Below, one piece after another: positions 1,049 to 61,884 of a DNA stretch of 64,000 bases. The stretch comes from Guillardia theta CCMP2712. Lineage: Eukaryota > Protista > Cryptophyta. Every line of letters starts with the position of its first letter. The first letter of the stretch is position 1. The position numbers and the translations under genes were made by a program. The notes beneath the pieces were generated by a model. That model made no database searches and was not told where the DNA came from. It worked only from the letters and a program-made list of their open reading frames with translations. Location: positions 55,574 through 119,573 of the forward strand of contig NW_005434611.1 in the NCBI RefSeq assembly GCF_000315625.1, in the 5' to 3' direction.

Positions 1049-1121
<73 letters not shown>
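1049..1121. repeat. (CTGCTC)n hexamer microsatellite
   Basis: About 12 tandem copies directly visible. Confidence 0.95.
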
Positions 1122-32378: not shown

Positions 32379-32414
<36 letters not shown>

Positions 32415-41960: not shown

Positions 41961-42351
41961 CCGTTGGCAAAGGAACAAAAAGAACCGAAGACCGAGAAAA
42001 GATGATGGCGAAGAGGAGGAGGAGGGGGAGGAGGAGGAGGAGGAGGAGGAGGAGGCGAAGGAGGAGGAGGAGAAGGCGAAGGAGGCGAAGGAGGAGTAGA
42101 ATGAAGATAGGAAGAGATACAATGTCCTCAATGATGTGTGAGATAGAGATGATCGCTGAGGAGTAGGAGCAAGAAGATCAAGATGATGATGATGCAGACA
42201 AAGTCGGTCAATGACAATGAGGAGGTGGAGGTGTAGTATGAGGAGTTGCATGCATGTTTGAAGATTTCGACTGGAGAAATCTCAAGAGGCTAAGTTGGCA
42301 GATGTCCTGATGTTCTGAAAGGTCATATTTTGGCAGGTTTCCACTACCAGC

Positions 42352-45300
42352 ATGGAGGTTTGGAACAAGCTGCTGGAGGAAGGCAGCGAAGAGCGATGGA
42401 GGCTGCTGCAGCCATCAGAGTACGCAGCAGAACAGCAGCAGGAGACTGGGATCCCCCTGCACGAAAGCTACATGTCAGATAAGAGAAAATTCCGTATCGA
42501 CATCACCAAGGCAAACTCAAAAGACGCGGCAAAGTTGTGGTCCGACCCACGGTGCCTTCCTGGAGTGCTCAAGGGATACTACGACTTCTCCGCCCTGCCA
42601 GTCCCCGTCGACGCCTCACTGCGTCGAGCTGGGCTGCAGTCAGCGTTCGAGGACAGTCTGGTCTCCAAGACCAACGTCGAGATCCTGGTGTCTGCCAAGG
42701 GACTGCCGAGGAAGCGGCCGATCAGTGTGGATCCGAGATGCTGCCTGATCCGCTCGGGGAGGACGGGGCAGGGAGCGGTGTGGAGGGAGGAGCTGAAGAC
42801 GGAGAGGCTGGAGGACACGACCTCGCCAAGGTTTCAGGTTCCCTTCAAGTTCTGCTTCTGCGATGTCGGGGAGGACGAGGACATGTTGTTTGTGATATAC
42901 GATGACCCTGACCCGTTCGGACGAGAGCGCGAGGTCAGCAGGGACATCTCGCTAGGGGTATATGACTCCTCCTCCTCCTCNNNNNNNNNNNNNNNNNNNN
43001 NNNNNNNNNNNNNNNNNNNNNNNNNNNNNNNNNNNNNNNNNNNNNNNNNNNNNNNNNNNNNNNNNNNNNNNNNNNNNNNNNNNNNNNNNNNNNNNNNNNN
43101 NNNNNNNNNNNNNNNNNNNNNNNNNNNNNNNNNNNNNNNNNNNNNNNNNNNNNNNNNNNNNNNNNNNNNNNNNNNNNNNNNNNNNNNNNNNNNNNNNNNN
43201 NNNNNNNNNNNNNNNNNNNNNNNNNNNNNNNNNNNNNNNNNNNNNNNNNNNNNNNNNNNNNNNNNNNNNNNNNNNNNNNNNNNNNNNNNNNNNNNNNNNN
43301 NNNNNNNNNNNNNNNNNNNNNNNNNNNNNNNNNNNNNNNNNNNNNNNNNNNNNNNNNNNNNNNNNNNNNNNNNNNNNNNNNNNNNNNNNNNNNNNNNNNN
43401 NNNNNNNNNNNNNNNNNNNNNNNNNNNNNNNNNNNNNNNNNNNNNNNNNNNNNNNNNNNNNNNNNNNNNNNNNNNNNNNNNNNNNNNNNNNNNNNNNNNN
43501 NNNNNNNNNNNNNNNNNNNNNNNNNNNNNNNNNNNNNNNNNNNNNNNNNNNNNNNNNNNNNNNNNNNNNNNNNNNNNNNNNNNNNNNNNNNNNNNNNNNN
43601 NNNNNNNNNNNNNNNNNNNNNNNNNNNNNNNNNNNNNNNNNNNNNNNNNNNNNNNNNNNNNNNNNNNNNNNNNNNNNNNNNNNNNNNNNNNNNNNNNNNN
43701 NNNNNNNNNNNNNNNNNNNNNNNNNNNNNNNNNNNNNNNNNNNNNNNNNNNNNNNNNNNNNNNNNNNNNNNNNNNNNNNNNNNNNNNNNNNNNNNNNNNN
43801 NNNNNNNNNNNNNNNNNTCCTCTCCTCTCTCCTCTCCGCCTTATCGTCGTGTGCTCCTACCTCTCAGTTTCTCTTTCATCCCCTCCTCGCCTTCTGCCCC
43901 TCACCTCATCCTCCCTCCTCATTGTCTGCGCAGGAAGCTCGAGGGCTCCGAGGACGTGCTCTCCAGCGGGTATGCTGACGTCAACCCCAACGGCCTCCTC
44001 CTCCTGAGCGTCAAGTGCTCCCCCGTCCAGAAGCGATTCAGCGACACGGGGAGGACAAAGGAGGAGGCAAGAGCACATCTGCCAGCTCCTGTCCAGTACA
44101 AGCCGAGGGCAATGCGGGAGCTGGAGGCGTGGAGGCGCGAAGTTCAGGTGCAGCTGGGCAGGATGAAGGCTGGGGAGGCAGGCAGGCGGACCCCCCTGCA
44201 GGACATCCAGCAGAACCAGCGGGAGCCTCCTCGAGCTGGGCTAGAGCTGAACCAGTTCCTCCTCCTGCTGGAGAAGTCGCGGGTGCTGGACCCCCTGAGC
44301 TCCAAGAGGAGCGACGGGATCGGGATCAGCGAGAGCCTCCTCGGCTCCCTCCCCCGATGCGAGGCCATCGAGATCTTCTCACGTCAGCTGGGGACAGGCC
44401 AGGTGGTCAGCTGGAAGGAGCTGAACCCCCTGCTGGAGGAGGTGGGAAGCGCGCTCCTGCGCAACCTCCAGCAGAGGGTCGGGCCGCTGCCGACGAGCAA
44501 GAGAGGAGGAGACGTGGGAAACCAGGGGAGGAGGTGGGTAATGGAAGCGCGGGAAGGGGAGAGGACGGCGAGCCAGGAGAGCTCCTCCTCCTCCGTCGGG
44601 GAGCCGAGACTCGCGGTGAAGGTAGCAGGGATCACGAAAGCTTCGATCGCTCTCAAGAAAGTCCTGGCGGATGTGAGGGGGAGAAGATCGGGTTGGGGAG
44701 GAAGGGAGGAGAGGAGCAAGGAGGAGAACGAAGGGAAAGAGGAAGGGGAGGAGGAGGTAGAGGAAGAGGAGAGCATCTTCGAGCCTGGGGCTGTGGTGAG
44801 CAGGCGGAGCCTGTTCGAGGAAAGGGCGGAGGAGGAGGCGCGAAGTCTTGCTGAGAGGAAGGAATGCATCAAGGAAATCTTCTCGTCTGTTGCTGATGTG
44901 AGTCCATTCCTCCTCCTCCCTCTCCTCCTCCTCCACCTCCTCCTGGTCACGGTTGTGCCCGTCCGCCGTCGGCTCCTCCTACCGTACCGTACCGTACTGC
45001 CTCCTCCTCCGCGGCGTCGTCGTCGTGGTCGTCGTCGGTGGTCGTGGCCTTGGTTCCTGTTGACGCGAACTTGTGCTGCTTACCTCCGCTAGGGCTAGGA
45101 TGAGAGTGATAGAGGCAGGGGCAGGCGGTCGAGTTCGTATTCGTGGTCATGGCTGTTGNNNNNNNNNNNNNNNNNNNNNNNNNNNNNNNNNNNNNNNNNN
45201 NNNNNNNNNNNNNNNNNNNNNNNNNNNNNNNNNNNNNNNNNNNNNNNNNNNNNNNNNNCCTTCCCCCGCCTCCCCAATCTCGTCCAACTCCTCCTCCTCA

Positions 45301-45829: not shown

Positions 45830-45889
<60 letters not shown>

Positions 45890-46167: not shown

Positions 46168-46207
<40 letters not shown>

Positions 46208-46441
46208 AAAGATGCCGGCGCTTCCTCCGAGTGCAAGGAGGGTCTTGACGGAGCCTGGGAGGGTGACGCCAGGAGGGGGCCGGGTGTGGGCATGGGAGGA
46301 GACGTCGGAGCTGGACAAGTTCGGGCTGGAGCTGAAAACTCTCCCGGCACCCCAGAGAGCAGGAGGAAAGCTCGTCCTCGCCACACACAACACGAGGCTG
46401 ACCGTGCGAGAACTCATCGGTGAGTGAGAGGAGCAGCAGCA

Positions 46442-46481
<40 letters not shown>

Positions 46482-46588
46482 CAGGAGGGAAGGAGGAATA
46501 TGCTGAAGAGGAGCAGGGAAGGACAAGCTGGATGTCGAGGAGGGCTGGAGAGGAGGAGAGAGCGATGGAGAGAAAGAGGATCAAAGGG

Positions 46589-46623
<35 letters not shown>

Positions 46624-46790
46624 AGAGTGGGAAGGAGCAAGCGATGTTGTCTGACGGCGGCACAGATAAGAGTCTCCTTCAGAAGGGGCTGGAGACTCCA
46701 CGAGCTCTGAAGCTTCTCGACGATCCCTGGCTGCCGTTCAGCACGCGGCTGCAAACAGCAGCAGGGAGAAAGGGGACCAAGAGGAAGTGA
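42352..46790 (+). CDS. C2-domain (copine C2A-like) protein with a long low-complexity C-terminus, interrupted by two assembly gaps
   Basis: VEILVSAKGLPRKRPISVDPRCCLI...WREELKTERLEDTTSPRFQVPFKFCF...DMLFVIYDD. An upstream exon is possible. Confidence 0.65.
42981..43816. other. Assembly gap (N run)
   Basis: Ns, flanked by TCC-rich low-complexity sequence. Confidence 1.
45159..45258. other. Assembly gap (100 N)
   Basis: Ns. Confidence 1.
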
Positions 46791-46920
46791 AGAACAAGGT
46801 GAAGTTTGAGCCAGCAGATATGAGGGAGGAGGAGGAGCAGGAGCAGGAGGAGGAGGAGGAGGAGGAGGGTATGGAAAGAAAGTTGGGACTTTATCTCTTC
46901 TTACAAGGATTCTGCTCCTC

Positions 46921-47873
46921 CTACGCGTCCTCCTCTCCTCCCTCAAGGATGGGCGACAGGATATAGCTCCTCGACATGTCCGAGAGCTGAGCCACGTGGC
47001 TGTCTTCTAAGTTGAAGTCCAGGGTTTCACAGACTGAGGAGGGGCTCCTGTCGCTCGAATGCTTCATCCACCCCTCCAGCTTCCATCCCTGAGGCACCTC
47101 CACCGCCTGCTCCCTCCCCCCAGCCTGCTCGCTCCTCCCCCTCCTCTCCCTCCCGCAAGGGCTCGCGCACTGGAGGAACGCATCGCTCGCATGCACGCAG
47201 TTGGTGCCTGACGTCTGCTCCAGCAGCTCGCACGTCTCCATCCCCTTCCCCATCACGTGGAACCTCGACTGCACCCTCCCCAGCACCCCCGCCACCACGA
47301 CCCCCAGGCAGAGGCCGATGCGGCAGTTCAGATCCACCTCCTCCTCCTCGCGGAAGCGCTGGAGAGACAGGATCATGTGGCGAGCCAGCGACAACATCTC
47401 CCTGCACTTTCTGTGTGTGCTTTCAGCCGTAACCCAGTCCTGCTCGCAGGGCAGCCAGCCCGTGACGATGTACGCGTCCCCACCGTGTCCATCTTGAAGA
47501 GCTGCAGCTGCTTCACCCGCTCGTCGAACTGCGAGAAGACCTTGTGGATCATTTTCGCCACGTCGATCGCCTTCATGGTCTGCGACATCCTGGTGAAGCT
47601 GCAGATGTCGAGCTGAAGGATGACTGCCGTCTGTAGGTTGCTCTGGATCGTCAGCGGAGAGTGTATCATCTTCTGCACGATCTTCCCCGGCAGCAAGTCC
47701 AGCAGGATCTCTTGCAGGTTCTTCAGCTCTGACATCCTCGACCTCCCCGCGAACCAGTTGAGCCTCTCGTGCACTTCCAGCCTGTAGGAGAGGAAGAGCC
47801 CCGACAGAAGCACCAGCGCTAGCTGCACAAGGCAGACGTCCCCTGCTCCTGCTCCTGCTCTTGCTCCTGCTCT

Positions 47874-47921
<48 letters not shown>

Positions 47922-50132
47922 CCATGGAATTTGCTGCCAGCGGCAGAGGACGACGAGACGAGAAGCGAGGACGAAGACTGTGAGCTTCAGGACCTGGCGG
48001 AAGTCGATCCCGGAGGAGATGGAGTGGAACACAAGGTAGACGGCCACAGACAAGAGCATGCGATCGTAGCGGCTGTCGAGCATGCAGAGGGCGGTAGAGA
48101 GGAGGAGGAAGAAGACCTTGAGAACGAAGAGACCCTCCTTCACTCTCCCTGCCTTCTGCTCCCTGCACGCTAGACGGAGGAGGAGCCCCACCGAGAGGAG
48201 GGAGCCGAGGAAGTGGAAGAGGGCGAGCACGAGCACGACCCTCTCCTCCTCCCAAGAGCTCTGCCGCACGATGAAGTGGAAGTGACAGACGACGGCGCAG
48301 AGGTGGACAACAAGGGCAGCCATGAGTGCTATTCTCTTGCTGCTCGCGCTCTCTTCCTGAAAGCTCTCCTCAAGCTTCCCGTCCTTGAACTGCGTCAGGG
48401 GGTTCAGGCACGCCCTGGTCCTCCTGCTGAAGGAGGAGGATGAGCTGCAGCAGTGGCTCCACGATATCTCCGAGTCCTCCAGCTTCAAGTTCTGGTTGCA
48501 GAATCTGTTGAGCTTGCACACGCCCCCATGGGAGAAGGACTGAAACACGTCGTACGCCTCCACCTTGAACACTTCCATCTTCCCCTTCCCCTTGATGTCC
48601 ATGTGGCCCTTGTACATGCAGGAGCAGAGCTTGTCCTCGCAGCCCTCCATCACCTCAGCGAACTCACGCGTGCATAGAACCTCGTTCGGCTCCGCATACT
48701 TGCACATCCTTGCCGCCGTGTTAGCCGTGTCCCCGTAGACGCAGTAGAAGGCCCGGTGTTGCCCGATCACAGCTCCTGCGATAGCGCCATGGTTGATTCC
48801 CACCTTGAGCTGCAAGCTGACCCCCTCTACCGTGTAGTAGTGCGCCAGCTCCCGCAGCTCGTTGGCCAGGCGGATCATCTGCACAGCGTACGACTGCGGG
48901 TACGGCTTTCCCTGCTCTGCCTCGTCGAAGGGCCTGGCGGCCCTGGGGCAGGTGATGATGTACCAGTCGCCGACATGCTGGTACTTGTACATGCCATAAT
49001 GGTCGACGACGTCGTCGAACATCTCGAAGACCTCGTTCAGCAGCTTGAACGTCTTGGTGGTGGATCGAGCTTTCAGGTACCTCTGCGGCTCCAGCGAGCA
49101 GAACATGATGGTGCATGCGGGGAGAGAGACGCCGAGGAAGTCATTGATAGGACAAGTCTCCATCTTCTGCAAGACGTTCTCAGGGATCAGCGTGTAGATC
49201 AGACTCCTGCTCTGCTTGATGGCTACCAGCGACTGCCTCGAAACCAAGAACTGCTGCCACTCCCGCGTGTTGAGGAGCGAGCCAGAGAGCGTCGAGGCTG
49301 CTGCAATGATGTTCTGGACGATGGATACGACCACCAATCTCGAGGACAAGATGCCAAGGAGGGAAGAAACAGTCAGCAGCAGGACAGTGTTCACTCCGTT
49401 GAGAAGCATCGTCGTCCTTACCCGGAGCTGAAAGAATCGGGGGAGCAGAGGGGCAAGCATGAACAGCGCAATACAATCTCCTCCCATGAAGAGGGTCGAG
49501 CAAGTCGTGCGGTAACGGCAAGCGCCCTCTGAACATATTTCGTCCAGCTTCTGCGTGTGACATCCCGGAAACGAAGCAGTTTGCTGGTTCTGTGAATCTA
49601 GCACAGCGACATTCTGTTGAAGGAACCACAACTTGGACTTGTGCATCTCCAGCCTGGAGTAGAAGAGAACAATACAAACATACAAGGATAGAATATACAT
49701 GGACAGAACAATCTCATACTGTCGCTGCAAGTACTTCCTGATGGCCGACGATAGAGACAATCCGATCACAAGCAAGGACAACAAGCTGACAATGAGGTAG
49801 GCCACTGACTTTGCCCGATCTAAAACCCTCTCCTGGTCATCAGGGAGCGGGAGCTGGTCGTAGAAGGACGCCATGACGACATGAAACGTGATGATGAGCA
49901 TGAAATGAGCTGTGCGATTGTTGAACTTCAATTCCCAGAAGTCACAGCGAACATTGTCATGCATGGAAGAATCCGACTTGACGTCCCACGTATCATGACT
50001 CAGCAACTCGTTCATTACAGTGTGCATCCTGATCTTGCTGAACTGGTCCAGACAGGCAGCAGCTTTTAGAACCACTCGCGACACTGCTGCATAAAGATCC
50101 ACGATCGCCCTTGCCCAGAAAGCTTTCGCCAT
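46921..50132 (-). CDS. Transmembrane class III nucleotidyl cyclase, M1-C1-M2-C2, probably guanylyl-type; apparently intronless; 1-nt frameshift at ~47478-47481
   Basis: C1: CTIMFCSL...KLLNEVFEMFD...YKYQHVGDWY...LKVGINHG...GAVIG...YCVYGDTANTAARM...IKGKGKM. C2: ILQLDICSFT...FSQFD...FKMDTVG[fs]DAYIV...CRIGLCLGVVVAGVLG...FHVMGKGMETCELLEQ. Two multi-TM blocks. Confidence 0.93.
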
Positions 50133-50639
50133 GCCGAAAGAAGGGGGGAAGGTGTCCTCCTTCTCTCAAGATATTTGGGGATTGCAGTTCAGTCTTGATC
50201 ACAAAACAGAGCGACAGTTGGATCCATAGAGGACACGTTGCGTAGTGCGGGAGTTCAGATCCTTGTTAGATACACGACGTGCGCATGCAAAGAAAGTGCC
50301 ATAAGAGAGATGCGGGGACGAGGAGGCAGATGGCAGGCGGATGTGGAGGAGGATGAGAGGGTGGGGTCGGGTGGAGTGGGAGGGGTGGGTGGGGTGGGCA
50401 GGAGTTAGGGGGCACGGTGAGAGATATTATCAATGACTTGCAGGAGGCAGATGGGCTAACGGCGCGGAAGGGCTGAGGCGGGAGCAGGAGTGAGAGGATG
50501 AGATGGAGAGAGCAGGAGTGAAGGAGACGGAAAGACTAGTGACAGGAAGGGGAGCGGGAGCGGGAGCGGGAGCGGGAGAGCGGGGGAGGAAGGTAGAGTA
50601 GGGGACTGTTCAGGGAGGGTTTCATCTCATGGATTTGTC

Positions 50640-52820
50640 GGGGAACCAGTTTCTGACAAAAGAGGGGGTGGGGTAGTACAATATGTACGGGTAGGATAGA
50701 GGATTCATGAGGCTGCTCAGTATCTTTCAGGGGTGAATGAATATGGAAAATAGGGGTACTTATCGAAGAGTCTTATTGTTAGGGTGGGGTACTATGACAC
50801 ATACGTATGACGATAAAAATGTAATGAAATAGCACGGCACCCCACCCCTCCACCATCCATATGTAGGGGTGGGGAATGGAGAATAGGGGTACATCTGGCA
50901 AAGTGACCACGAAAAAGGAGGGTGATAGAGGGTAAAAGATAGGGTGGGCAAAAAGATTGCTGGGGTCCGTGCACGTGGGAAAGGGTCAACCAGGAGGGGG
51001 TGTAGGGTATCAACAGCCGTACTTTGAAGTAGTGACCGATAGGGGTCCTCTCCTATTCCTGTGAATTTCCTGGGGGTGGGATACATGTTGGTGGGGTATG
51101 CAGACATCAAAAGGGGGTTCTTTTACATAGATTTAGGTGGGTCCTCACCAATGTGGTACGGTGGGTTATGAGAGAGGGTGGGTGTAGCTTTGTGGTGTCA
51201 TCGAGGGAGTCCAGTACAAAGTGCACATCAACCTGGCAGTTCCTTCTTGATGGGGTTGAGTAATCTTTTACTGAGCCTCTCGGCCATTCCGAAGTTCCGT
51301 GCCACTGTGACGGTGACTCGTGCCGCCGGCACTGACAGTGACCGGCCCCGCCGCGGCCGGCGCGGCCCGGCCCGGCCCGGCCGGACCGTCGCCGGACCGT
51401 CGGACTTCCGGCGTGACTCAGTGTCTAGCCTCAGATCAGATACTCGGATACCCTACGGTCCGACCCGGGCGCGGCCGGGGGGGGGGGACCGGGACTCGGA
51501 TGATTGAGCGGCCGGCGGCGCCGGGCCGGGGGCCGCCGGGGGGCGGCGGCGCCGGCACTGCCGAGTTACTAAATTGAGTAACTTAAACTCGGAGCTCCGC
51601 GGTCGGAGGGGCCGAGGCCCTCCAAATTACAGTCGGAGCGGCCCCACGGCAGCGGCCGACTCGGGGCCCCCGGTCTTGAGTGACTCAAAGTTCAGCCGCA
51701 AGTTAAACTTGAATCTTTTCTTTACTCAAAGTTAAGTGAAAAATCAGTACGAGGACAATCCTGATCGGACACCTAGTGAGGCCCGGCCCAGCGCTCAGTC
51801 ATGGCGTCATCGAGTCATAGTTGGCTGGTTGCTGACTGAGATGACTCACCGAGTCTTTACTCAAAGTAGTCATGAGCCCTGGCCCCTTCACTCTCAAGTG
51901 CGTGCTCTCATAGAGAATCCCCGGTGGGGTGGTCCGATGGGGTACGGTCTCAGGGAACCGTGGGGGTACCGGGTAGGATCAATGGGGGTGGGGGTTGAAA
52001 TCGGAAGGGGTAGCACATTTTACTAGATCTCAATAATTCAGTCAAGTTGACTTTCGTACCCACTACTAGTAGCTTCTACTGCCCGAATATACCTACCCCC
52101 ACCTACCCCCCGGGCCACCCCACCCCACCTAATCATCCTAGCTGCAAAAGATTACGATCTGCACTCGATACCCCAACACCCCCAATATATCCTTTGTAAG
52201 TACCGGTGTGACAATCACACAGTCACCCCCTGAACCCCACAGACATGAAAGGTACCCACCTTATGTACCGGATATCTTCCAGTAGATGGTAGGGGTCATC
52301 ATGGAGGGTCTTAAATACTACCGGTTCTATTCACTGACTATAGTGGGGTACATTTGGAGGCCATGACAACCCTACCCCACCGGTACGGCACAACCCAATC
52401 CATCAACGACGCCTCACCCAATCCCGAGTCCGCAGCCTGCAGACTTGCACCTGGCGATCCACAACTCCAGATACCCCTCCTTTGTAACACACTACCCCTA
52501 CATTGCAACACATGCATAGCAAGATCGCTGATTCATCAATTGTGCTTCTATTCAATGGAACAGATTGCTGCCCCATATGGGTGTTTTGTGAACCCCTGAC
52601 CCTACCTGTTGCAAGAAGCACCCATCACTTATGTACCCCCACCCCCCCAACATCAATACAGTTACCCTGGAATGACTTTTGTAGCTTAGCCAGCGGCAAT
52701 ACCGGTAGTGACCCCACCCCCAGGCCCACATCTCACCCCAGGGTGGCTGCGTTACCACCCTCTCTACGTCCCTTTACCACCCCACCCATTTACCCACTAT
52801 CCACTACCCTACCGAGGTGC
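50640..52820. repeat. ~2.2-kb composite intergenic element: G-tract arm, GC-rich core (51280-51880), C-tract arm
   Basis: GGGGT words dominate the left side up to ~52020 and ACCCC words the right side from ~52055. TCTTTACTCAAAGT occurs at 51719 and 51854, with multiple TGACTCA/TGAGT words. Confidence 0.7.
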
Positions 52821-53399
52821 TGTCTCCATCTTTTCCCTTCCTTTTGTTCCTCCTCCCTTTGTTATTACTCTGTCCTATCCGTCTTCGTTCAACACAGCTT
52901 CAGATCTTAACATGAACACCCATGCTTCCTCTCAGCGCCATCCTATTCCTCTTTCTACCCACTGACCTCCTTCACTCATCAGCAGTATGCTCGACAGCCC
53001 TATCCTGAAATGTTTTCACGAAAATCCATGGACTTTTCCCTCGGGGCCTCCACTTGCGCTTGCAATTTTGGTCAATGCCTTATCTGACTCATATTGTGCT
53101 TGTTTCACCTCTTGCAAAGAGAAGAGCGTTCAAATGAAGTAGGATGTCTAGAGCGGTTGATGGTCAGAAATAGTCTTCAATGCAACATACACCAAGACAG
53201 CGGCATAGCATTAGGGGCTGTATTTGCTGTTGATGTCAAGAGCTCGATATGTTGTCATGCTAGTCAACACACGTACTGAATCGTTTTTAGCAGGATCAAA
53301 GTTATCTTCATCTCCCTCTGATTTCAATTCCTTCCTCAAACTCGATTCATTCATACCTTACTGAATTGAACCCACGCGCTCCATTCCTACTCTAGCAAT

Positions 53400-54323
53400 A
53401 TGCCATTCAGCAACAAACTCCTCGCTGATGAAGAGGAGATGAGCATGAAATTTCGCCGGACAACATCCGCCACTCAAAACGCGACAGCGACACAAGCTCG
53501 GCTCCAACTGAAGGAGGCTTTCAAGGTCTCATTTCCCCAATCTACACTTCAGCGCCACATGCTCATGTTGCCGTGCAGGAGATCGACAAAGATTCCAGCG
53601 GGGCTATCGATCAAACAGAGTTTCAGGACGTCTTGAAGTACCTGCAGATACAGCTACAAGACCCGCTCAACGACGCAGACACAGTCTTCGGTGAGAGAGA
53701 ACCTTGTCTCTGAGTGTATCCTGACGAGGGTAACATCAGATTACATGGACCACAACGGGAATGGTCTGATCACGTGCGATGAGTTTCTCAACACGTTCGA
53801 CGACTTGATCCACAAGAGAGAAGCTGTCGGGCACATGGACGTGGACGATGTTATCAAGGACACTCTGTGCGGGATCCTCTCTCGAGCCCGGGAAGAGCGA
53901 GGGCATGTGATCCAGGCGTTCATGATTGCTGGGCAGAACATAGAGCATAACGACGAGGGATTCGGGAAGGGATACTGGGGATGCAAATGGAAATTCATTC
54001 TTTTCGACAAGATCTACGCTAAACCTGTGGTGGACGGAAGTCTTGTGCCCGTAAAGCAGAGATACTCGTTCCTGAAGGAGAAGCTTGAGTTGATTCAGGA
54101 CCAGAAGTACTGCCCTTGGCTGGAAGCGATGATGGAGTCGGAGGAGCGATTCAAGAAAGAGATCATCAAGCACGATGTACTTGCTGCTTGTCCGTGCCCG
54201 GGGAGATGCGCTGACGTTTCATGGCAGGTGGTTCGAGACTTCTGCAAAGAATGGCTGCGACACCTGAACGAGCTACATCCTGACAGGATCAGCTCTGAGA
54301 CTCCACAGGACAAGGCTGGATGA
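53400..54323 (+). CDS. EF-hand pair protein with an uncharacterised C-terminal domain (4 exons)
   Basis: LKEAFK/EIDKDSSGAIDQTEF and VF/DYMDHNGNGLITCDEF are canonical EF loops; GT-AG introns. Confidence 0.88.
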
Positions 54324-54480
54324 AGCTGCTGGATCGCAGGAGTTCCGTGAGATTCAGCAGATGTGAAAACTTTGTACTCAATTTGTAGACTAGAAAATTA
54401 CAAGGCAAGTGATAAGAAGCTTATGGAAGCTCAGCAAAATCAGCACACAAGAAGCAACAAGTAGCAAAGAATAGCTCCTA

Positions 54481-56749
54481 CTATACAAGAAGATACTTTC
54501 GTCCCTCATCTCCTTCAGATGAAAGCCCACCCGATGCTCTTCGCCGGGTGCATCTTCGTCGCGCTAACAGCTGCACCCTGACCGCCTCCGCCTGTGATGA
54601 GTTGAGGAGGCGAAGAGGGAGAGAGCGAGGATGAGCAAGGAAGGGGGCAGTTGATGAGGAGGATGGCGAGGAAGAGGGGAGAGAGGGCAGAAGGGAGAAG
54701 CAGGAGCGAGAGGAGGAGGAGGAGCGGGAGGAGAGCGAGGAGGAGAGCGGAGAGCAGGGCAGGAGGGAGAAGCAGGAGCGAGAGGAGGAGGAGGAGCGAG
54801 AGGAGGAGGAGCGAGAGGAGGAGGAGGAGCGGGAGGAGAGCGAGGAGGAGAGCGGAGAGCAGGGCAGGAGCGACCTGAATGTGCAACCATGTCGGCCGTG
54901 AGTACAGGCGGTGCTGATCCACGACTGAGAGCTCGAGGAACCCGACCGAGGCGGGCCTTGGCGTCTGCTGGAGAAAATCAGAGGAGGCTGGGGGAGAGGT
55001 TGGTAGGCGCTCTTACCGAAGGAGCTGCCGCTGGAGTACTGCGTGAGCTGCTCAACTTGTAGCGCGTACTCCTTCTGCGAAAACATCAGACGGCAGCAAG
55101 GGTCACACATCGGTGGCGGTGGGGGGGGAGGGAGGGAGAGACTGGTGAGAAGGGGAGGGGGAGGATGGGTAGGAGGAGGATCCGTGGGGACTGGTGAGGA
55201 GGGGAGGGAGAGGAGAAGGATAGGTAGGAATAGCAGGGGGATTGAGACGAGAAAGAGCGACAGTTTGAAGGGAGGAGGAGGAGGAGGAGGACAGTACGGG
55301 TGGATGTGAGGAGGAAGGGCGGGGGTCGAGCTGAGCACCTGCTGGGAATCTCGAGAGATCCATGACTCGCTGCGGAGGTTGTTGTCATGGTCCGAACCAT
55401 CCTCGTGTTCCTCCTGCAGGATCCTCTCGTTCGACGCCGCTCCTTCCGACATCGACGAGCCCTTCCCTTCCTCTGTGCTCCGTTCACTGTACGGGCTGTC
55501 CCTGCCCTGAAAATCTTTGCCGCTGGGTGTGTCCGCGACAGAAAGCGCCTGGAAGGAGGAGAAAAGCTCAGACTGGAGGACAGCATTCTCATCTAGCTCA
55601 CCGATTCCTCGGAGATGGCATGTGTAGACAACTTCTCTGTTGATCGTGTCAGCGCATGACAAGGAAGGGAGGAGGCAGAGCAACCTAGCATGCTGCTCGA
55701 GATCCTTGGTGACTTGTTAGACTGGTGCATCTTGATCGGATTCCGAAACAAGCAGCAACCCGCCTTCTCTGCACCAGCAGAAAAGAAACCATCAGTCCCA
55801 GGAACTTGGGGTGAAGCGAGAAAGCTACTTGTCAGATCGTCGTCGTCCGAGTCGAACGCTTCATCGCACGATTTTCCCTCTTGCAAGGGAAAGAGGGGAG
55901 GAACAGAGTTGCTGCAACTGAAGATCTGATTGCAAGACAGGGGAATGAAATCTGCAGAAGCCTCCGGCATCGGTTTGCGAAATTCTGGCACAGCAGTCGC
56001 TTCGAACTCCTTATCGTCCGCCTGGGATCCATGTCAAGACAACTCTTCTCTGTCATAACAACATCATCCTTCTACCTGTAGCCCCTCAATGAAAGAGATC
56101 GAGTCCGAGTCAAAGTCCTCTGCTTCTCCTTCCACATCCAACTCTGACGAAGGGTCAGGATCCAACGATGCCTCTCCGTCCATGCTTTGCAGCTCGACGT
56201 CCAGCTCTTGCACTTGCGCTTGCCCCTTGCTGCTAGCTTGCTCGAAGATAGAGACCCCGTCGCTGAGGCCTTTCATGTGGGTATAGGTCACGATATAGTT
56301 TTCGTTGAGCCACTTAGTGACGTGATCGCGGCTCCTCTCGACGGTCTGCATCCTCTTCCTCAACTCCTCTTGCCTTGCTATGCGCTGTAGAGCAAGGGCT
56401 GCCTTCGCCCTCTGCAAAATCTCGTCGTTCCCATTGCGGCGCAGGTACTGCAAGAAAATCATCAGCATTTCAAAGTAAAACCTCCGATCGTTACCATCGA
56501 GGTGAAGGAGCTGTGGATTCTACCCGACGTCGGCGCAACGACTTTCTGGCTCGCAGAGGTCAAATCTGAGTCCACGCTCTCCTCCTCGCTGTCGTAGAGA
56601 TGGATGCCCAGCTCTCCAATGTCCGGCTCGTCTTTCGACGGCCTGTACATAGCTTCATCCGCCCCCCCCCGAGCGATATCGTCTTGGAGAGGCATCACAC
56701 AAGAGACTATGGCAGCAGCCTCCTGCAAACACAGCGCGACTCTTCCCAC
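54481..56749 (-). CDS. Uncharacterised multi-exon Ser/acidic-rich protein
   Basis: Successive minus-strand coding-like ORFs 56462-56749, 56064-56468, 55593-55991 and part of 54481-55683; no recognisable domain. Confidence 0.5.
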
Positions 56750-57529
56750 AAGCTCCTTCGCTCTACAGATTCAATCCGACGACAAGGATTGAACTGTCCG
56801 AGCTTCGTTTTCACTGCTGGGTATCAGGTAACCATAGGGCGGTGTCTGGACGAATGGCGTCAGGTCACAGCAGTTTAACTTTGCGTTCTGACCCAGCTCT
56901 CAGGCTGTATGCTCGTCGCCTATCCTATCTCTGTCTCTCAACCCCCTCTCAACATTTCGACCCAGTTTGCACTTTGTCGACTACCCAGGCTCTCTTTCAG
57001 CCGCCTCATTCTAAGGTCACTCATAGATCACGGTTCACACTGTAACTCTTCCCCCCATTCTATCGTCTCTCTCGCTGCTTCCTCGTCCATTCTCGACTGA
57101 GTCTTCGCACTCCACTCTCGATGACTTCCTCCCAGTTTTATCTTCCTCCTCACTGGGGCTCTCAGTCAGTTCCTCCGACAGGGCCTGGTGCCCGGCTTCC
57201 TCATCAGCATCAAGTTATCTTAATCTCTCGCTCGATTCCTTCATCCTCCTCCTCCTCCTCCCTTCCTCACTCCTCTCCCCTCCTCTCCTTCTCCGCTTTC
57301 TGCATGACCCTGCTCCCTTTGTCTGCATAATCGTTTCCTCTCCCAAGTAGTTCAGGTTTTCCGTCGTGGGGTGCACGTTTGACTAGCCTCAATGAAACTT
57401 ATGCAGAATTCTATATTTTATATCTGTAAATTTGAAATATCAAATTCAATATTGAAATATTTAGCTAAAATTATTCACATGTAGCACCATCCAGTACTTT
57501 TTAAAAATCCATTTGGAGATCCAATAGTA

Positions 57530-57725
57530 TCGACACCCCCACCCCACCCCACCCCACACGTATGAGAAGCGGTCCGAACTCACCCACCACCCCTACACTC
57601 ATCTTGATGATTCTCTTAGAGGACCCCTACTCTTGTCTTCAAAGTAAACATTCCCATGCACCTTCACCTTCGGAGTACCCCCACCCCATCCTTTGTCGGT
57701 GTGTACCCCCACCCCCCCATTTTTC
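57530..57725. repeat. ACCCC/TACCCC-rich intergenic tract between divergent genes, flanked by AT-rich segments
   Basis: CACCCCCACCCCACCCCACCCC and GTACCCCCACCCC (twice). Confidence 0.6.
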
Positions 57726-58067
57726 ATAGGTTCCTAGGCGGCGCAAGAAGCCAGGCAAACCATGTACTACTACTACTCGTATCACTGATGTTGAGTGAAA
57801 TATTTCACATCCCCTTTTTGAAATATATACCAACAATTTCAAATTTTCAAGAGAATCAATGAAATCTTTGTATTGGATACAGAAAGGATCAGAGGGGGGA
57901 TGAGGGAATCAAGGAAAGAGGGGGATGATGTTGATGCGTAGGAGGGCGATGATATTTTGAAAGTTTGACAGCTGGTCATGGTAGCAGGGAGGGAGGAGGG
58001 GGCGGGAGGGAGGAAGCTGGGGGGAAAGGGAGGCCAAGCGCTCCATGCTGTGAGGCCCTTGTCAAGG

Positions 58068-61000
58068 ATGTCTCCCTCCGACAAGAAGACGTCCAGCTCC
58101 TCTCCTGCCGACAAGAAGAGACCCTCCTCATCCTCCTCCCCTTCCAGGAAGGTTGCTGCTGTAGGTTCTTTGGCGTCCCGGGTGCAGAGTGCGGAGAAGA
58201 AGGTGAAGATGCATGGGGAGGGAGAAAGACCAGATGGATCAGCGAAACATGCAAGAAAGCATGCTGCGAAGGGAGGGGAGCAGAAGGATCGGGGCGACGA
58301 AATCAGGATGGACGAGGATCGGGTGCTACGGGACTCGATCGATCAGTTCTTCAGGAGCCACATGCAAGGATATATACAAGAGATTGAGAAGAGCCATGGC
58401 GGACAGAAAGATTCTTCAGCACAAGAAGAGGATCCATCTGTCGGGTACAGCCATTCGCGGGTCATGGTTGAGAAGCGATGTTGCTGTAATGATAGCGTCG
58501 TGAGTTTCACATGCAGGTGTCGAGGCCGTTGGAGCAGGAGGAGGGAGATTCGGACCATTCTGCTGTCAATCGCAAGGAAAGTTTCCTCCCTTCAAAGTTT
58601 CTGAGGTGATGGAGAGTAACTTTGACGACCCAGCAGGCGCTTACTGAGCAGGAGAAGAGCGATACCGTGGACTCGCTGACGATACGAGCGTTGCAGATGC
58701 AGGAAGGCGGTGGAGATCTCAAGTCTCATGTCGTTGACTATGAAGCAGATCAAGGAGCTGAAGCGGCAGCATGTCATAGAACTCCAGCATGCGCGTCTGG
58801 GGTCACACGGTGGAGGACAGAACGGGGTATCAACGCGTGACATCGAGAAAGCGAGGAAGGAGATTGGCGATCATTACTCCATGAAGCTGCAAGAGTATCA
58901 CCATGTCGTGTTGATGATGGGAGCCTGCCCTTGCCCTGATGCCTGCGGTCTGCAGAACATTGAGAGCAAACTGATGGACGCTGAGAAGAGTGTTGAAGGA
59001 AGGCTGAAGACCTTCGAGTCCGAGATGATACGTCTCAAAGCAGAGCTGCTACAAGTGACTCAGGAGAAGACTGAGCTGCAGAAGGAGCTTCAGTTGCAGC
59101 TGTCTGCGAGCAATCACTTGCAATCCCACCTGCAAAGGTTTCGGCGCTGATGATAGAGGGAAGGAGGAATTTACGTGTGCGTTTCCCAGCATGAAAGAGC
59201 AAAAAGAAAGAACTCATGATGCCATCGAGACGATCAGGAAAGAGCTCGCCGATGAGAAGCGAGCGCATGCTGCAGCTCGACAAGCAGTGGCTGAATGCAG
59301 GCAAGTGATCAACGAGATTAGAGGCAGTCAGGAGAAAGGAGGCCCGGTCGATCATGCTGAGACTGTCCAGCGCCTGCAGGTTGTGGGAGCGATTTTGATT
59401 CCCCTTTCGTATTTTGATACCTCTCGGCAGGAAAAGCTTCACAAGCTCGAGGAAACCTGTCTGAATTTGAGGATGGAGAAGGAGAGTTTGCAGCAGTCCA
59501 GCCAAGAAGCTTGCTCTCGCGCTTCCGCCCTCACGCACGAAATTGACCGACTGAATGTGATCCCCTACCAGGTCGCTTGCTCCTCATGGAATGAACGTGA
59601 CTCGCAGGAGCGGCTGGAGGATCTCAAGTTGGAGATCTACGAGAAAGACTCTAGGATACGAGCTTTGGAGGGTGAGAAGGAGGAGCTGGAGAGTCGCAAC
59701 GTCCTCGCCAGCGAGAGGTACAAGAGCATGGAAGGGCTGCTGGCAGAGAGGACCAAGCAGCGAGACGACGCTTACCTGCGGCTGTCAACCTCGAGTGTTC
59801 ATGTCATGCAGCAAGTCGCCTTGCTGAGCAGCTGACGTGGCCTGGCAGAGCGAGGGGACGCGACATGGGTCGGAGGCAGACAAGTCAAGGATGGAGTATC
59901 TGGAGAGGGAGCTCCAGAGTCAGACCTCTCTCCTGCACTCCTGCCATCAAAAGCTCCAGTCGGCGGAGTCGAGCGTAGAGCAGCTCACGAAGCTGAACAG
60001 GATCCTGCAAGCAGAGCTGGCGGCACAACACGAAGCTCAGGCCCATCAGCTTGTCCCAAGAGAGGAGGAGAGGATAAGTCTCGTCGAGGTGAGCAATGCC
60101 ATTGTCGAAGAGGGAGAGGCTCATTTTGCACTTGAAAAGGAGGGCCGAGAAATGCTCACTGCTGCTCCCCCCGCCAGGCATGCACAATCCTTTCCTTTGC
60201 TCTGCTGACCTTGGAGCAGAGAAGACGGCGTCTCAGTCATGAGGGAAGCAGAAGACAAATACAGCCCATGCTCCTCGCTAGCAGAGAAGATTCAGGTCCG
60301 CGATATGAAGCTGTCGCCTCCTCCTCACCTGCCTTGCAGAAAGAGCTCGAGGAGACAAGGGAGAGGATCGACCGGAACATCGCCTACATGTCCTCCAGCA
60401 GGAAAGAACGCGCAAACGAAGTCGAACCTGTTCCTTTAGCACATCCTTCGTCTTTCGATCCGTTGGAGACAGAGAGACTGGTCGAGGAGGCAGGACGACA
60501 GGAGGCCAAGTACCACCTTCCTGCCGAGAGAAGCAGAGAGTTGCTGAGTCCAAGACGACTTCACTTCAAGAGCGACTCGTCATGGAAGAACTTGAACGTA
60601 GACGCTCCCCTCCAGGTTACAAGTCGCAGCTTCCTCCTCTCTCCATCTCACTATTTTGATCAGAGCCATCACTTCAAGTCGATAGAAGATCAGATGAAGG
60701 CAGAAGTTGAGGCCGAGCAAGCGTGAGACGTCTGACGGTCATGGACGGCACTCAGTCTCACCTGCTAGCGCCAGGTACAAGAGTCTGCCTGCTCTTTACT
60801 TTGGAGATACGTCGCATGATGTCACAATCAAGAACATGTAAGACGCGTCCATGTAGCTTTGTGTCAGCTGGACTATCAGCTGACAAGGGCGAGGAGTCTT
60901 CTGATCTTGTACAACAGCCTGCCGGATGTGTTCGAGATGTGGGAGGAGTTGGCGATCTCCTACAGGCACAGGCTGAGGTTCGTTCAGGCGCTGGGCCGAG

Positions 61001-61776
61001 AGGACGGGGGGTGAGGAGGCACGAGAGTTGAACCTTCCATCGCTGACTGCGTGCGAAGGCGATACTGGGAGGAGGAGAAAGCGAAGCTCGTGGTGGACGA
61101 GAGCCGGTCAGAGTCAAGGCAGGGATCCGTTCCCTTCTCAATTCTTTGCAGGCTGCTGGAGAAGATGAGAACGCAGATAGGACGGGAGATGACGCTGATC
61201 CTGAGGCGAGAAAAATGCCTCCAAGAGTCCCTCCAGCCTATCGATGTCCAGCAGCAACCCAGCAGAGGCGTGTCAAAGGCATCATCCGTCCTCAAGAGTC
61301 AGGAAATCGTCCGAGCTGAGAAGAAGCGACGGGTAGTCTCTCGACCTCTCCTAGCGAGTCGTGAATGACATCTGTTGAATTTCTTGTTCCATGTGCAGGA
61401 AAAAGAATTACAGCGGGCTACCCAGCAGGTTTTGGAGGCAACGACCAAGTTCAAGGCGCTCCATGGCAGGCCAATCCTGTACGATTGATCATCCTCCAGT
61501 ACTTCCCAGCTCCTGACGGACGTGGGCTGCAGGTTCCGAGGCATGAGGTACACCGATGTGATGCGATGGCAGCACGACCAACAACTAGAAAACGACAAGA
61601 GAGAAAAGTCGCGAGATGCCAGCAGGAAGGCAAGCAGGGCGTTCTAAGTATGCGTCGTTGCTAGCTCCCGAAGGCTCATTGTACTATATACATAACTGAC
61701 TCTATCTCTACCTCATCCCTCTCCTCCTGTAGCCATTTCCTCCTATCAAGTTGTCAATATTCTTGCTTGGAGCCTG
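58068..61776 (+). CDS. Long coiled-coil protein with a C-terminal MAP65/Ase1/PRC1 (CCDC87-like) domain
   Basis: Heptad-rich exons. The spliced C-terminus VFEMWEELAISYRHRLRF...LILRREKCL...EIVRAEKKRR/KELQRATQQVLEATTKFKALHGRPIL/FRGMRYTDVM resembles the E-HGRPFLxxGxxY motif of that family. End approximate. Confidence 0.6.
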
Positions 61777-61884
61777 ACTGACCGGCAGTTCGACGTTCAA
61801 GTAACCCAAAAAAATGCTGGATTTGACTTGCTTTGACTTTTTTTTAATTGAGATGTCGGTTTCTTGAAGGCTCAGCGAAAAAGA

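What the first reader, a model, noticed from the sequence alone, without database searches (positions are those of the whole stretch)
46921..50132. Transmembrane cyclase with inverted C1/C2 catalytic roles and non-canonical GC-like specificity residues
Seen: C1 lacks the first metal-binding Asp (FCSL instead of FADI) but has the transition-state Asn/Arg (GDTANTAARM). C2 has both metal Asps (LDICSF, GDAY) but N/R are replaced by E/L (GKGMETCELL). Established: mammalian tmACs have the opposite division of labour, and the inverted order is characteristic of ciliate/apicomplexan GCs and Dictyostelium GCA. The substrate-defining positions in C1 are Gln (YKYQHVGD; Lys in ACs, Glu in GCs) and Cys (YCVYG; GC-type). 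Inference: a single-active-site pseudoheterodimeric guanylyl-like cyclase without the alveolate P4-ATPase fusion, with a Q/C pair that could give altered or relaxed nucleotide specificity.
Basis: partly seen in the sequence, partly recalled or inferred. Interest (0 to 1): 0.8.

Follow-up and report, generated by a model that had tools for sequence, protein, structure and literature searches.

The report
Inverted 12-helix cyclase with Gln/Cys pocket
This is a real, probably expressed gene of a cryptophyte alga for a 12-helix membrane enzyme that makes cyclic nucleotides; its two catalytic halves swap roles relative to animal enzymes, an unusual glutamine sits where the base (A or G) is chosen, and the apparent break in the gene is most likely a sequencing error.

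Summary
One intron-less gene lies on the minus strand (46921-50132) and encodes about 1070 aa: 6TM-C1-6TM-C2, a class III cyclase.

- **C1:** it lacks the first metal Asp (S346). It carries the base-pocket pair Q385/C464, the transition-state pair N471/R475 and the KGKG Lys.
- **C2:** it carries both metal Asps (D842 and the Asp of GDAY). It has E966/L970 where Asn/Arg would be.
- **Matches to solved structures:** C1 matches animal C2 domains best, and C2 matches animal C1 domains best.
- **No P4-ATPase** is fused or adjacent.

1. **The frame break is probably an error.** The frame breaks inside a C4 run (47478-47481), at the GDAY Asp codon. Two other public runs of the species, one with a transcript-like coverage pattern, read C5, which restores the frame. 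The only run that agrees with the window carries two further private homopolymer-length differences.
2. **The gene is not unique.** It belongs to a well-separated clade of at least 42 protein clusters (SH-aLRT 100). Named members come from Guillardia, Hanusia and Cryptomonas; the rest are metagenome contigs. In this clade Q (40/42), C (40/42) and N/R (42/42) are conserved.
3. **The nucleotide made cannot be read from sequence.**

Earlier first-reader notes of this scan flag Q/C cyclases on other pieces of the same genome. None has been followed up. Verdict: a new variant of a known kind, of moderate interest.

The parts
46921..50132 (-). Whole coding region of the cyclase gene, about 1070 codons plus stop TAG at 46921-46923. 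It is read in two frames in this assembly. No introns.
   Evidence: ORFs. Collinear alignment to homologs from the N-terminus to the C-terminal RSYIL motif. Contigs of runs X1, X2 and X3 are collinear and show no GT-AG joint.
46665..50250 (-). Probable transcript extent: 5'UTR about 118 nt, 3'UTR about 256 nt.
   Evidence: Contigs of run X3 (RNA by guess) cover only this span. Runs X1 and X2 also cover the upstream spacer 50404-51000 (tables 2 and 8).
49281..49907 (-). First membrane block (res 76-284). Five hydrophobic peaks pass the 1.5 cut-off; a sixth segment (res 76-95) is my reading and lies below it. A Cys-bearing loop of about 50 aa lies between helices 3 and 4.
   Evidence: Hydropathy scan. 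Alignment A1 consensus. AF2 model of the nearest relative P0001 matches full-length AC5, AC9 and AC8.
48543..49235 (-). Transducer helix plus catalytic domain C1 (res 300-530). It is functionally like animal C2: base pocket Q385/C464, N471/R475, K514; degenerate metal positions S346/D389.
   Evidence: Pfam. PDB phmmer: best hits are the ANP receptor GC and the C2 domains of AC5, AC9, AC8 and IIC2. Column signature SQDCNRK.
48978..48980 (-). Codon of Gln385, in the column of AC Lys and GC Glu.
   Evidence: Q in 40 of 42 clade members.
48741..48743 (-). Codon of Cys464, in the column of AC Asp and GC Cys.
   Evidence: C in 40 of 42 clade members.
48924..48950 (-). Clade-specific motif C-P-R-A-A-R-P-F-D (res 395-403), directly after the GDWY strand of C1.
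   Evidence: Near-invariant in the Q/C clade and mostly a gap in cyclases outside it.
47790..48323 (-). Second membrane block (res 604-781), six predicted helices.
   Evidence: Hydropathy scan.
47841..47924 (-). In-frame (GGAGCA)n microsatellite that encodes a (Gly-Ala)n loop between helices 11 and 12. It is absent from homologs.
   Evidence: Sequence. Alignment. Array 47874-47921. Contigs of all runs break here.
47164..47735 (-). Transducer helix plus catalytic domain C2 (res 800-990). It is functionally like animal C1: metal Asps D842 and the Asp of GDAY; D882/H959 at the pocket columns; E966/L970 at the Asn/Arg columns.
   Evidence: Pfam. PDB phmmer: best hits are the C1 domains of AC8, AC9 and AC5. 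D842 aligns to the metal Asp. Signature DD(D)HEL.
47478..47481 (.). C4 run (G4 on the coding strand) where the reading frame changes. Public runs X1 and X3 read C5, which gives ...T-V-G-D-A-Y... in one frame.
   Evidence: Sequence. Read-laying table 4: 'put in behind 47477: C' in 243.7/243.7 (X1) and 75.7/75.7 (X3), and 0/5.76 in X2. Homologs read FKMDTVGDAYIV.

Best explanation
The locus encodes an intact, transcribed 12-transmembrane class III nucleotidyl cyclase of about 1070 aa. The organism is a cryptophyte; earlier notes of this scan say Guillardia theta, and the nearest named proteins agree.

The two cytosolic catalytic domains pair head-to-tail and form a single active site. C2 holds the two Mg/Mn ions through D842 and the Asp of GDAY. 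C1 holds the nucleotide base (Q385, C464), stabilises the transition state (N471, R475) and binds the gamma-phosphate (K514 of KGKG). The mirror-image site is degenerate for catalysis: S346/D389 from C1, and D882/H959/E966/L970 from C2.

This is the inverted arrangement known from alveolate P4-ATPase guanylyl cyclases and Dictyostelium GCA, here without an ATPase.

The apparent frameshift at the GDAY Asp codon is a homopolymer-length error of the reference assembly.

Shown: architecture, residue placement, clade conservation, and the extra base in other runs. Inferred: catalytic activity. Also inferred: the product is a purine 3',5'-cyclic nucleotide. My leaning is GTP preferred (about 45%), both ATP and GTP accepted (about 30%), ATP only (about 20%).
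For: - **Domains and residues:** Pfam, two PF00211 halves. Residue-by-residue alignments to solved cyclases place S346, Q385, C464, N471 and R475 in C1, and D842, E966 and L970 in C2.
- **Inversion:** C1 matches the C2 domains of AC5, AC9, AC8 and IIC2. C2 matches the C1 domains of AC8, AC9 and AC5 with higher scores than their C2 domains.
- **Topology:** 5 + 6 hydrophobic peaks, plus a weaker first segment. The AF2 model of the nearest relative P0001 (pLDDT 78, pTM 0.71) matches full-length AC5, AC9 and AC8 best, E 7e-27.
- **Clade conservation (42 clusters):** C1 has N 42/42, R 42/42, Q 40/42, C 40/42 and K 37/40. C2 has metal Asp 19/20 and 16/18. The degenerate positions vary freely.
- **Clade separation:** SH-aLRT 100, stem 1.63.
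- **Frame:** an extra C in all contigs of X1 and X3. X2's two private indels also sit at homopolymer runs.
- **Transcription:** X3 coverage is confined to 46665-50250.
- **No ATPase:**
- **Coding signal:** GC3 0.76.
Against: - No enzymatic data exist for any member of the clade that I could find.
- X3 is RNA only by the tool's guess.
- The one certified RNA run (X20) gave only a few, mostly partial, reads at the 3' end.
- X2 (2011) agrees with the window's C4, so a real frameshift in that culture is not excluded.
- The structural model is of a 32-36% identical relative, not of this protein.
- A Gln at the Lys/Glu column has no tested precedent in a eukaryotic cyclase to my knowledge.
Confidence: 0.75

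Rival explanations
1. The frameshift is real in the sequenced strain, and the gene is a recent pseudogene there. It would encode a protein truncated within C2, without the second metal Asp.
For: The window and run X2 (another label of the species, 2011) both read C4. No gene model for this locus appears in either protein collection.
Against: X1 (DNA by coverage of the spacer) and X3 read C5 in every contig. X2's other two private differences are also homopolymer-length changes that would break the ORF. This points to error-prone data that the assembly probably shares. Apart from this one base, 3.2 kb stay open in frame with conserved motifs up to the C-terminal RSYIL.
Confidence: 0.12
2. It is an ordinary, ATP-specific adenylyl cyclase. 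The Gln acts as a substitute for Lys, and the Q/C pair has no special meaning.
For: From my own knowledge, not checked here: the mycobacterial class III cyclase Rv0386 has Gln/Asn at these columns and is mainly an adenylyl cyclase with GC side activity. The overall fold matches membrane ACs best.
Against: The second pocket residue is Cys, the GC type, not Asp or Thr. The clade nests among Glu-bearing inverted cyclases next to the P4-ATPase GC clade, not among Lys/Asp cyclases.
Confidence: 0.2
3. It is a catalytically dead pseudo-cyclase that serves as a receptor or scaffold.
For: The unusual pocket residue Gln. The W in GDWY. A clade-specific insert after the GDWY strand.
Against: All seven catalytic positions of one composite site are kept across 42 clusters, while the mirror site drifts freely. 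This is the pattern of selection on catalysis.
Confidence: 0.05
4. The Q/C pocket selects a pyrimidine nucleotide, giving cCMP or cUMP, as in bacterial Pycsar cyclases.
For: Only that the pocket is non-canonical. No tool result points this way.
Against: No similarity to pyrimidine cyclases was seen among the best PDB or family hits. The pocket keeps the GC-type Cys and the purine-cyclase framework.
Confidence: 0.03

Closest known systems
Alveolate/stramenopile P4-ATPase-guanylyl cyclases (Paramecium GC, Plasmodium GCalpha/beta, Toxoplasma ATPaseP-GC)
   Same: Two 6TM-cyclase modules with inverted roles: the first cyclase domain binds base and transition state, and the second holds the two metal Asps (PMC6592433). 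This clade is a neighbour in the C1 tree, with weak support of 80-85.
   Different: No P4-ATPase module here. The hits that do carry PhoLip_ATPase domains have signature D-E-K-S-N-R-K. The pocket is Gln/Cys instead of Glu/Ser, Glu/Ala or Glu/Cys. In C1 this clade has lost the first metal Asp, whereas the P4GC hits have lost the second.
Dictyostelium discoideum GCA (12-TM guanylyl cyclase with AC topology; Roelofs et al. 2001, cited in PMC6592433)
   Same: 12-TM topology without an ATPase, and an inverted C1/C2 division of labour, according to the literature.
   Different: I had no GCA sequence in hand. Its pocket residues and its place in the tree were not tested.
Mammalian membrane adenylyl cyclases AC1-AC9
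   Same: Same overall fold and topology. Best structural matches are AC5 8sl4, AC9 and AC8, over about 1000 aligned columns. Transducer helices precede both catalytic domains.
   Different: The roles of C1 and C2 are swapped. The pocket is Q/C rather than K/D. There is a clade-specific CPRAAxPFD insert.
Mycobacterium tuberculosis Rv0386 (class III cyclase with a Gln/Asn pocket)
   Same: Gln at the Lys/Glu column. This is from my own knowledge; the papers I could read did not discuss it.
   Different: It is a bacterial homodimeric soluble enzyme. The second pocket residue is Asn, not Cys. It is not related beyond the class III fold.

Membership tests
Class III nucleotidyl cyclase (PF00211) | Catalytic-domain profile match above the curated cut-off | tested here: met
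   First ORF 124.7 bits and second ORF 40.9 bits, against a cut-off of 21.9.
Class III nucleotidyl cyclase (PF00211) | Two metal-binding Asp in one domain of the dimer | tested here: met
   D842 aligns to the first Asp. The GDAY Asp codon (47476-47478) is read in the second frame of this assembly, and in frame in runs X1 and X3.
Class III nucleotidyl cyclase (PF00211) | Transition-state Asn and Arg, and a phosphate-binding Lys, in the partner domain | tested here: met
   N471, R475 and K514 in C1. N and R are kept 42/42 in the clade.
Class III nucleotidyl cyclase (PF00211) | Cyclase activity | not testable with these tools
No published assay of a clade member was found.
12-TM pseudo-heterodimeric membrane cyclase (class IIIa topology) | 6TM-C1-6TM-C2 order, with a helical transducer before each catalytic domain | tested here: met
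   Hydropathy gives 5 + 6 peaks plus a weaker first segment. LIPENV and LLPGKIV helices align to the GC and AC transducer region. The model of relative P0001 matches full-length AC5, AC9 and AC8.
Inverted-type eukaryotic cyclases (alveolate GC / DdGCA type) | First cyclase domain carries the base pocket and Asn/Arg; second carries the metal Asps | tested here: met
   Signatures SQDCNRK (C1) and DD(D)HEL (C2). Reciprocal best matches to animal C2 and C1 domains.
P4-ATPase-guanylyl cyclase (P4GC) | N-terminal P4-type flippase module fused to the cyclase | tested here: not met
   The ORF starts at 50132 behind non-coding-looking sequence. No ATPase was found in ORFs of at least 200 aa within 50200-64000. 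tblastn with P4GC N-termini hits only an unrelated P2-type ATPase at about 30300-30770 on the other strand.
Guanylyl cyclase (by specificity residues) | Glu at the Lys/Glu column, and Cys, Ser or Ala at the Asp/Cys column | tested here: inconclusive
   Cys464 is met. The first position is Gln385, not Glu.
Adenylyl cyclase (by specificity residues) | Lys at the Lys/Glu column, and Asp or Thr at the second column | tested here: not met
   The pair is Q385/C464.

The most novel reading that the evidence does not exclude
The conserved Gln/Cys pocket makes the enzymes of this clade dual-specificity cyclases. One active site would produce both cAMP and cGMP. The Gln amide would flip to read adenine or guanine, as proposed for the invariant Gln of phosphodiesterases. 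If so, cryptophytes and some picoeukaryotes run a second-messenger system with a single cyclase type for both purine messengers.
Probability: 0.25. Interest if true: 0.7.

Novelty: new variant of a known kind. Interest (0 to 1): 0.45.

Why it matters
Substrate choice in class III cyclases is usually read from a Lys/Asp (ATP) or Glu/Cys (GTP) pair. Here a whole, deeply diverged eukaryotic clade keeps Gln/Cys under evident selection, so this rule of thumb cannot name the product.

Assaying one member would show what a Gln pocket selects. It would also show whether cAMP, cGMP or both are made by the membrane cyclases of cryptophytes and related plankton.

The clade also adds inverted 12-TM cyclases without a flippase outside alveolates and Dictyostelium. 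That bears on how the P4-ATPase-GC fusion arose.

On the practical side, the reference sequence carries a one-base homopolymer error that probably kept this gene out of the annotation.

Tried and rejected
- **Intron instead of a frameshift: rejected.** The two frames abut exactly within FKMDTVG|DAYIV. There is no room for an intron and no GT-AG. The contigs of X3 are collinear.
- **The (GGAGCA)n stretch as an intron: rejected.** It has no splice-site dinucleotides and its length keeps the frame. However, the contigs of all runs break there, so its presence in mRNA is not directly shown.
- **Joints in read laying (47620>48567, 47620>48946, 48779>48945, 48995>49087): not taken as splicing.** Their ends are non-canonical, their sides are short (20-51 nt) and some occur in DNA runs. 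They most likely come from contigs of paralogues.
- **RNA editing or programmed frameshifting: not needed.** Run X1, which also covers the upstream spacer and so is DNA, already has the extra base.
- **Upstream P4-ATPase exons:** none found.
- **Rfam scan of the window:** nothing.
- **Literature:** six completed searches and four papers read found no description of cryptophyte 12-TM cyclases or of a Q/C pocket. The Rv0386 precedent rests on my own memory.
- **The search of earlier findings by sequence** gave a blank.
- **Run X20 (certified RNA):** too few reads, mostly partial, to judge expression or strand.
- **Reference sequences:** AC2/AC5, sGC, Paramecium GC and DdGCA could not be fetched as sequences. 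I used PDB alignments and architecture-labelled database hits instead.
Full report
**1. What is in the sequence**

On the minus strand an ORF of 919 codons runs from an ATG at 50132 to 47373. A second frame stays open down to a TAG at 46921-46923. Pfam finds the class III cyclase domain PF00211 in both: 4.1e-36 at residues 339-524 of the first ORF, plus a second stretch at its end, and 2.2e-10 in the second ORF.

The two frames abut within one conserved motif. Frame A reads ...QLQLFKMDTVG. Frame B reads, from the overlapping base on, DAYIVTGWLPCEQDW. The switch lies in a G4 run of the coding strand (C4 on the plus strand, 47478-47481). All full-length homologs read FKMDTVGDAYIV in one frame.

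Read through with an X at the break, the product has 1070 residues. It is collinear with its homologs from the N-terminal region to a conserved C-terminal PxGW...RSYIL motif. The sequence upstream of the ATG is pyrimidine-rich and does not look coding.

**2. Is the frame break real?**

I laid four public runs on 46400-51000, which is 4601 letters and within the operators' limit.

- Runs X1 and X3 carry the same species label and come from two different studies. Both show one extra C behind 47477 in all their contigs: 243.7 of 243.7 and 75.7 of 75.7 word depth, three contigs each. That makes a C5 run and yields GTG GGG GAC GCG TAC, that is V-G-D-A-Y, in one frame.
- Run X2 (2011, another label of the species, depth about 6) agrees with the window.
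- X2 alone also differs from the window, X1 and X3 at 49119 (one base fewer) and 49821 (one A more). Both lie at homopolymer runs, GGGG and AAAA, and each would break the ORF. X2 is therefore prone to homopolymer-length errors.
- The window carries scaffold gaps of 100 and 837 N. It was plausibly built from data of that kind.

I conclude that the break is most likely an assembly error (about 0.8). A real lesion in that culture remains possible (about 0.12).

**3. Transcription and gene structure**

X1 and X2 cover the spacer upstream of the gene (50404-51000) at the same depth as the gene, so they are DNA. X3 has no depth there or below 46665, and it covers 46665-50250 in collinear contigs (tables 2 and 8). 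That is the pattern of a transcript with a 5'UTR of about 118 nt and a 3'UTR of about 256 nt. However, the tool calls X3 RNA only by guess.

No joint with intron-like ends was seen. The four listed joints have non-canonical ends and short sides, and some occur in DNA runs. I take them for contigs of paralogues.

The raw-read RNA run X20 gave only 32 reads at the 3' end, most of them partial, and I do not use it.

The (GGAGCA)n array at 47874-47921 is in frame and has no splice signals. It encodes a (Gly-Ala)n loop between predicted helices 11 and 12. Homologs lack it. The same hexamer repeat occurs at six other places in the window.

**4. Architecture**

- A hydropathy scan gives five clear peaks at residues 113-284, plus a weaker segment at 76-95. 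It gives six peaks at residues 604-781.
- Each block is followed by a helix (SLIYTLIPENVLQKM; EILLDLLPGKIVQKM) that aligns to the transducer region of the ANP receptor GC, sGC alpha and bacterial Cya. A cyclase domain follows each helix.
- I built an AlphaFold2 model of the nearest relative, P0001 from Hanusia phi. It is sister to the window in the C1 tree and 32-36% identical over the two pieces. The model used an alignment of 29 family rows and has mean pLDDT 78.3 and pTM 0.71.
- Its best Foldseek matches are full-length human AC5 (8sl4, E 7e-27, 1076 columns), AC9 and AC8.
- The family therefore has the fold of animal membrane adenylyl cyclases. This was shown for the relative and is inferred for the window protein.

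**5. Catalytic residues**

I aligned 257 cyclase domains from the window protein and 158 database proteins, and read seven columns: metal Asp 1, Lys/Glu, metal Asp 2, Asp/Cys, Asn, Arg and the KGKG Lys.

| Domain | Signature at the seven columns |
|---|---|
| Window C1 | S-Q-D-C-N-R-K |
| Window C2 | D-D-(broken Asp codon)-H-E-L-Q |

The same placements come from HMMER alignments to solved structures.

- **C1 against the ANP receptor GC:** FSDI/FCSL, VETIGDAY/YQHVGDWY and YCLFGDTVNTASRM/YCVYGDTANTAARM.
- **C2 against AC9 C1:** kfdvwsndvnlanlmeq/rfhvmgkgmetcelleq.
- **C2 against Cya and sGC alpha:** lfaDIvgft/lqlDIcsft.
- **Reciprocal matches:** C1 finds the C2 domains of AC5 (1036-1252), AC9, AC8 and IIC2. 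C2 finds the C1 domains of AC8 (480-565), AC9 (463-539) and AC5 (529-612), with better scores than their C2 domains.

So C2 supplies the metals, and C1 supplies the base pocket, the transition-state residues and the phosphate Lys. This gives one composite active site, inverted relative to animal enzymes.

**6. The family**

An exhaustive HMMER search of 1.84 billion cluster representatives gave 15193 hits at E up to 1e-3, and 49 at up to 1e-30. The best hit is a Guillardia theta protein at 36% identity. No hit exceeds 56% identity, and the word-based search agrees. The window's own gene thus seems to have no gene model in these collections, although other Guillardia proteins are there (P0003, P0040). 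The frame break is the likely reason.

I built a tree of 116 Asn/Arg-bearing domains (IQ-TREE quick, LG+C20). The 42 domains with Q/C (38), Q/T (2) or H/C (2) form one clade with SH-aLRT 100 and a long stem of 1.63. It nests among inverted two-module cyclases that carry Glu at the first pocket column: E/S, E/R, E/H and E/K. The E/S clade is a weakly supported neighbour. Its long members carry P4-ATPase domains (PhoLip_ATPase), so these are the alveolate/stramenopile-type GCs. Lys/Asp domains fall outside.

Conservation within the Q/C clade:

| Position | C1 | C2 |
|---|---|---|
| Asn | N 42/42 | varies freely |
| Arg | R 42/42 | varies freely |
| Lys/Glu column | Q 40/42 | D 17/19 |
| Asp/Cys column | C 40/42 | H 13/15 |
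| KGKG Lys | K 37/40 | not conserved |
| Metal Asp 1 | never Asp (S 28/42) | D 19/20 |
| Metal Asp 2 | D 22/42, otherwise variable | D 16/18 |

This is the signature of selection on one active site. The mirror pocket, though catalytically dead, also keeps two residues (D882 and H959 in the window protein). It may bind a regulator, as the forskolin site does in animal ACs; this is inference only.

A motif C-P-R-A-A-x-P-F-D directly after the GDWY strand is near-invariant in the clade and mostly a gap elsewhere.

Named members come from the cryptophytes Guillardia theta, Hanusia phi and Cryptomonas paramecium. The others are metagenome contigs. One is an 81-kb, gene-dense eukaryotic contig with chromo and SET genes. 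The ESM Atlas lists Chlorophyta as the commonest known phylum of the nearest clusters.

**7. Organism and paralogues**

Earlier follow-up notes of this scan on other pieces of the same genome name it Guillardia theta. My nearest named hits agree with a cryptophyte, but I did not test the species.

First-reader notes on other pieces of the same genome describe further cyclases 'with swapped C1/C2 roles and an unusual Q/C pair' (s1-433959, s1-434881, s1-444208) and one with an E/R pair (s1-439730). They are unchecked and not followed up. Taken as leads, they say this locus is one of several paralogues. This window holds only this one cyclase.

**8. No flippase**

- ORFs of at least 200 aa between 50200 and 64000 have no Pfam domain.
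- tblastn with the N-terminal 1300 residues of four P4-ATPase-GCs hits only the generic P-type motif region of a cation (P2-type) ATPase at 29635-31896. That gene lies on the other strand, 17 kb away.
- The cryptophyte homologs are 1091-1188 aa and have no ATPase either.

**9. What it makes**

This cannot be decided here. Published rules, summarised in PMC6592433, assign Lys/Asp to ATP and Glu/Cys or Glu/Ala to GTP.

- The Cys and the phylogenetic neighbourhood lean toward GTP.
- Gln is isosteric with Glu, but it can both donate and accept hydrogen bonds. In principle it could read adenine N1/N6 or guanine N1/N2/O6. This is inference.
- From memory, and not verified in the papers I could open, the mycobacterial Rv0386 with Gln/Asn is an AC with marked GC side activity.
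- My odds are: GTP-preferring 45%, dual 30%, ATP-only 20%, other or inactive 5%.

**10. Comparison and novelty**

The inverted single-site design is known from alveolate P4GC and Dictyostelium GCA. So is the 12-TM fold. The new points are:

- a large, conserved, flippase-less clade defined by a Gln/Cys pocket;
- loss of the first, rather than the second, metal Asp in the non-metal domain;
- a clade-specific insert.

My literature searches found no description of any of this. These searches cover open-access papers and bioRxiv only. I rate it a new variant of a known kind, with moderate interest. The central claim, altered specificity, remains untested.

Noticed in passing
window 47478-47481: The reference sequence has a C4 run where two other public runs of the species read C5. 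This one-base difference splits the cyclase ORF, and no gene model for the locus was found in the protein collections.
   Followed up: yes
window 1050-1121, 31994-32011, 32384-32413, 45831-45884, 46173-46202, 46590-46619, 47874-47921: (GGAGCA)n hexamer microsatellites are scattered over the window on both strands. The last one lies in frame inside the cyclase and encodes a (Gly-Ala)n loop that homologs lack.
   Followed up: partly
window 48924-48950 (res 395-403): A C-P-R-A-A-x-P-F-D motif follows the GDWY strand of C1. It is near-invariant in the Q/C clade and mostly absent from cyclases outside it. Its function is unknown; it could be a regulator-binding surface.
   Followed up: partly
window 47487-47489 and 47257-47259 (D882, H959): The catalytically dead mirror pocket keeps a conserved Asp/His pair across the clade (17/19 and 13/15). 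This hints at a conserved ligand site.
   Followed up: no
window 49500-49655 (res 160-211): A loop of about 50 residues lies between helices 3 and 4. Homologs share conserved Cys and a FPPxRxC...GC pattern there. It may be an extracellular sensor element.
   Followed up: no
window 29635-31896 (+): A 753-codon ORF of a cation-transporting P-type ATPase (Cation_ATPase_C, E1-E2_ATPase). It is unrelated to the cyclase and lies on the other strand.
   Followed up: partly
window 5752-9510 (-): A 1252-codon ORF with a BEACH domain (2.2e-36).
   Followed up: no
window 42981-43817 and 45159-45258: Scaffold gaps (runs of N). The low GC reported for 42001-44000 is an artefact of the first gap.
   Followed up: partly
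L001:10001-12757: A Q/C-clade cyclase (P0010) sits on an 81-kb, gene-dense, intron-poor eukaryotic metagenome contig (GC 0.58) with chromo and SET genes. So the clade reaches beyond cultured cryptophytes, and the Atlas points to green picoalgae.
   Followed up: partly
P0007 (Hanusia phi transcript model): Its C-terminal half is out of frame relative to its relatives. It aligns as noise from the C2 region on, and its C1 is nearly identical to fragment P0018. This is probably a frame error in the transcriptome model.
   Followed up: no
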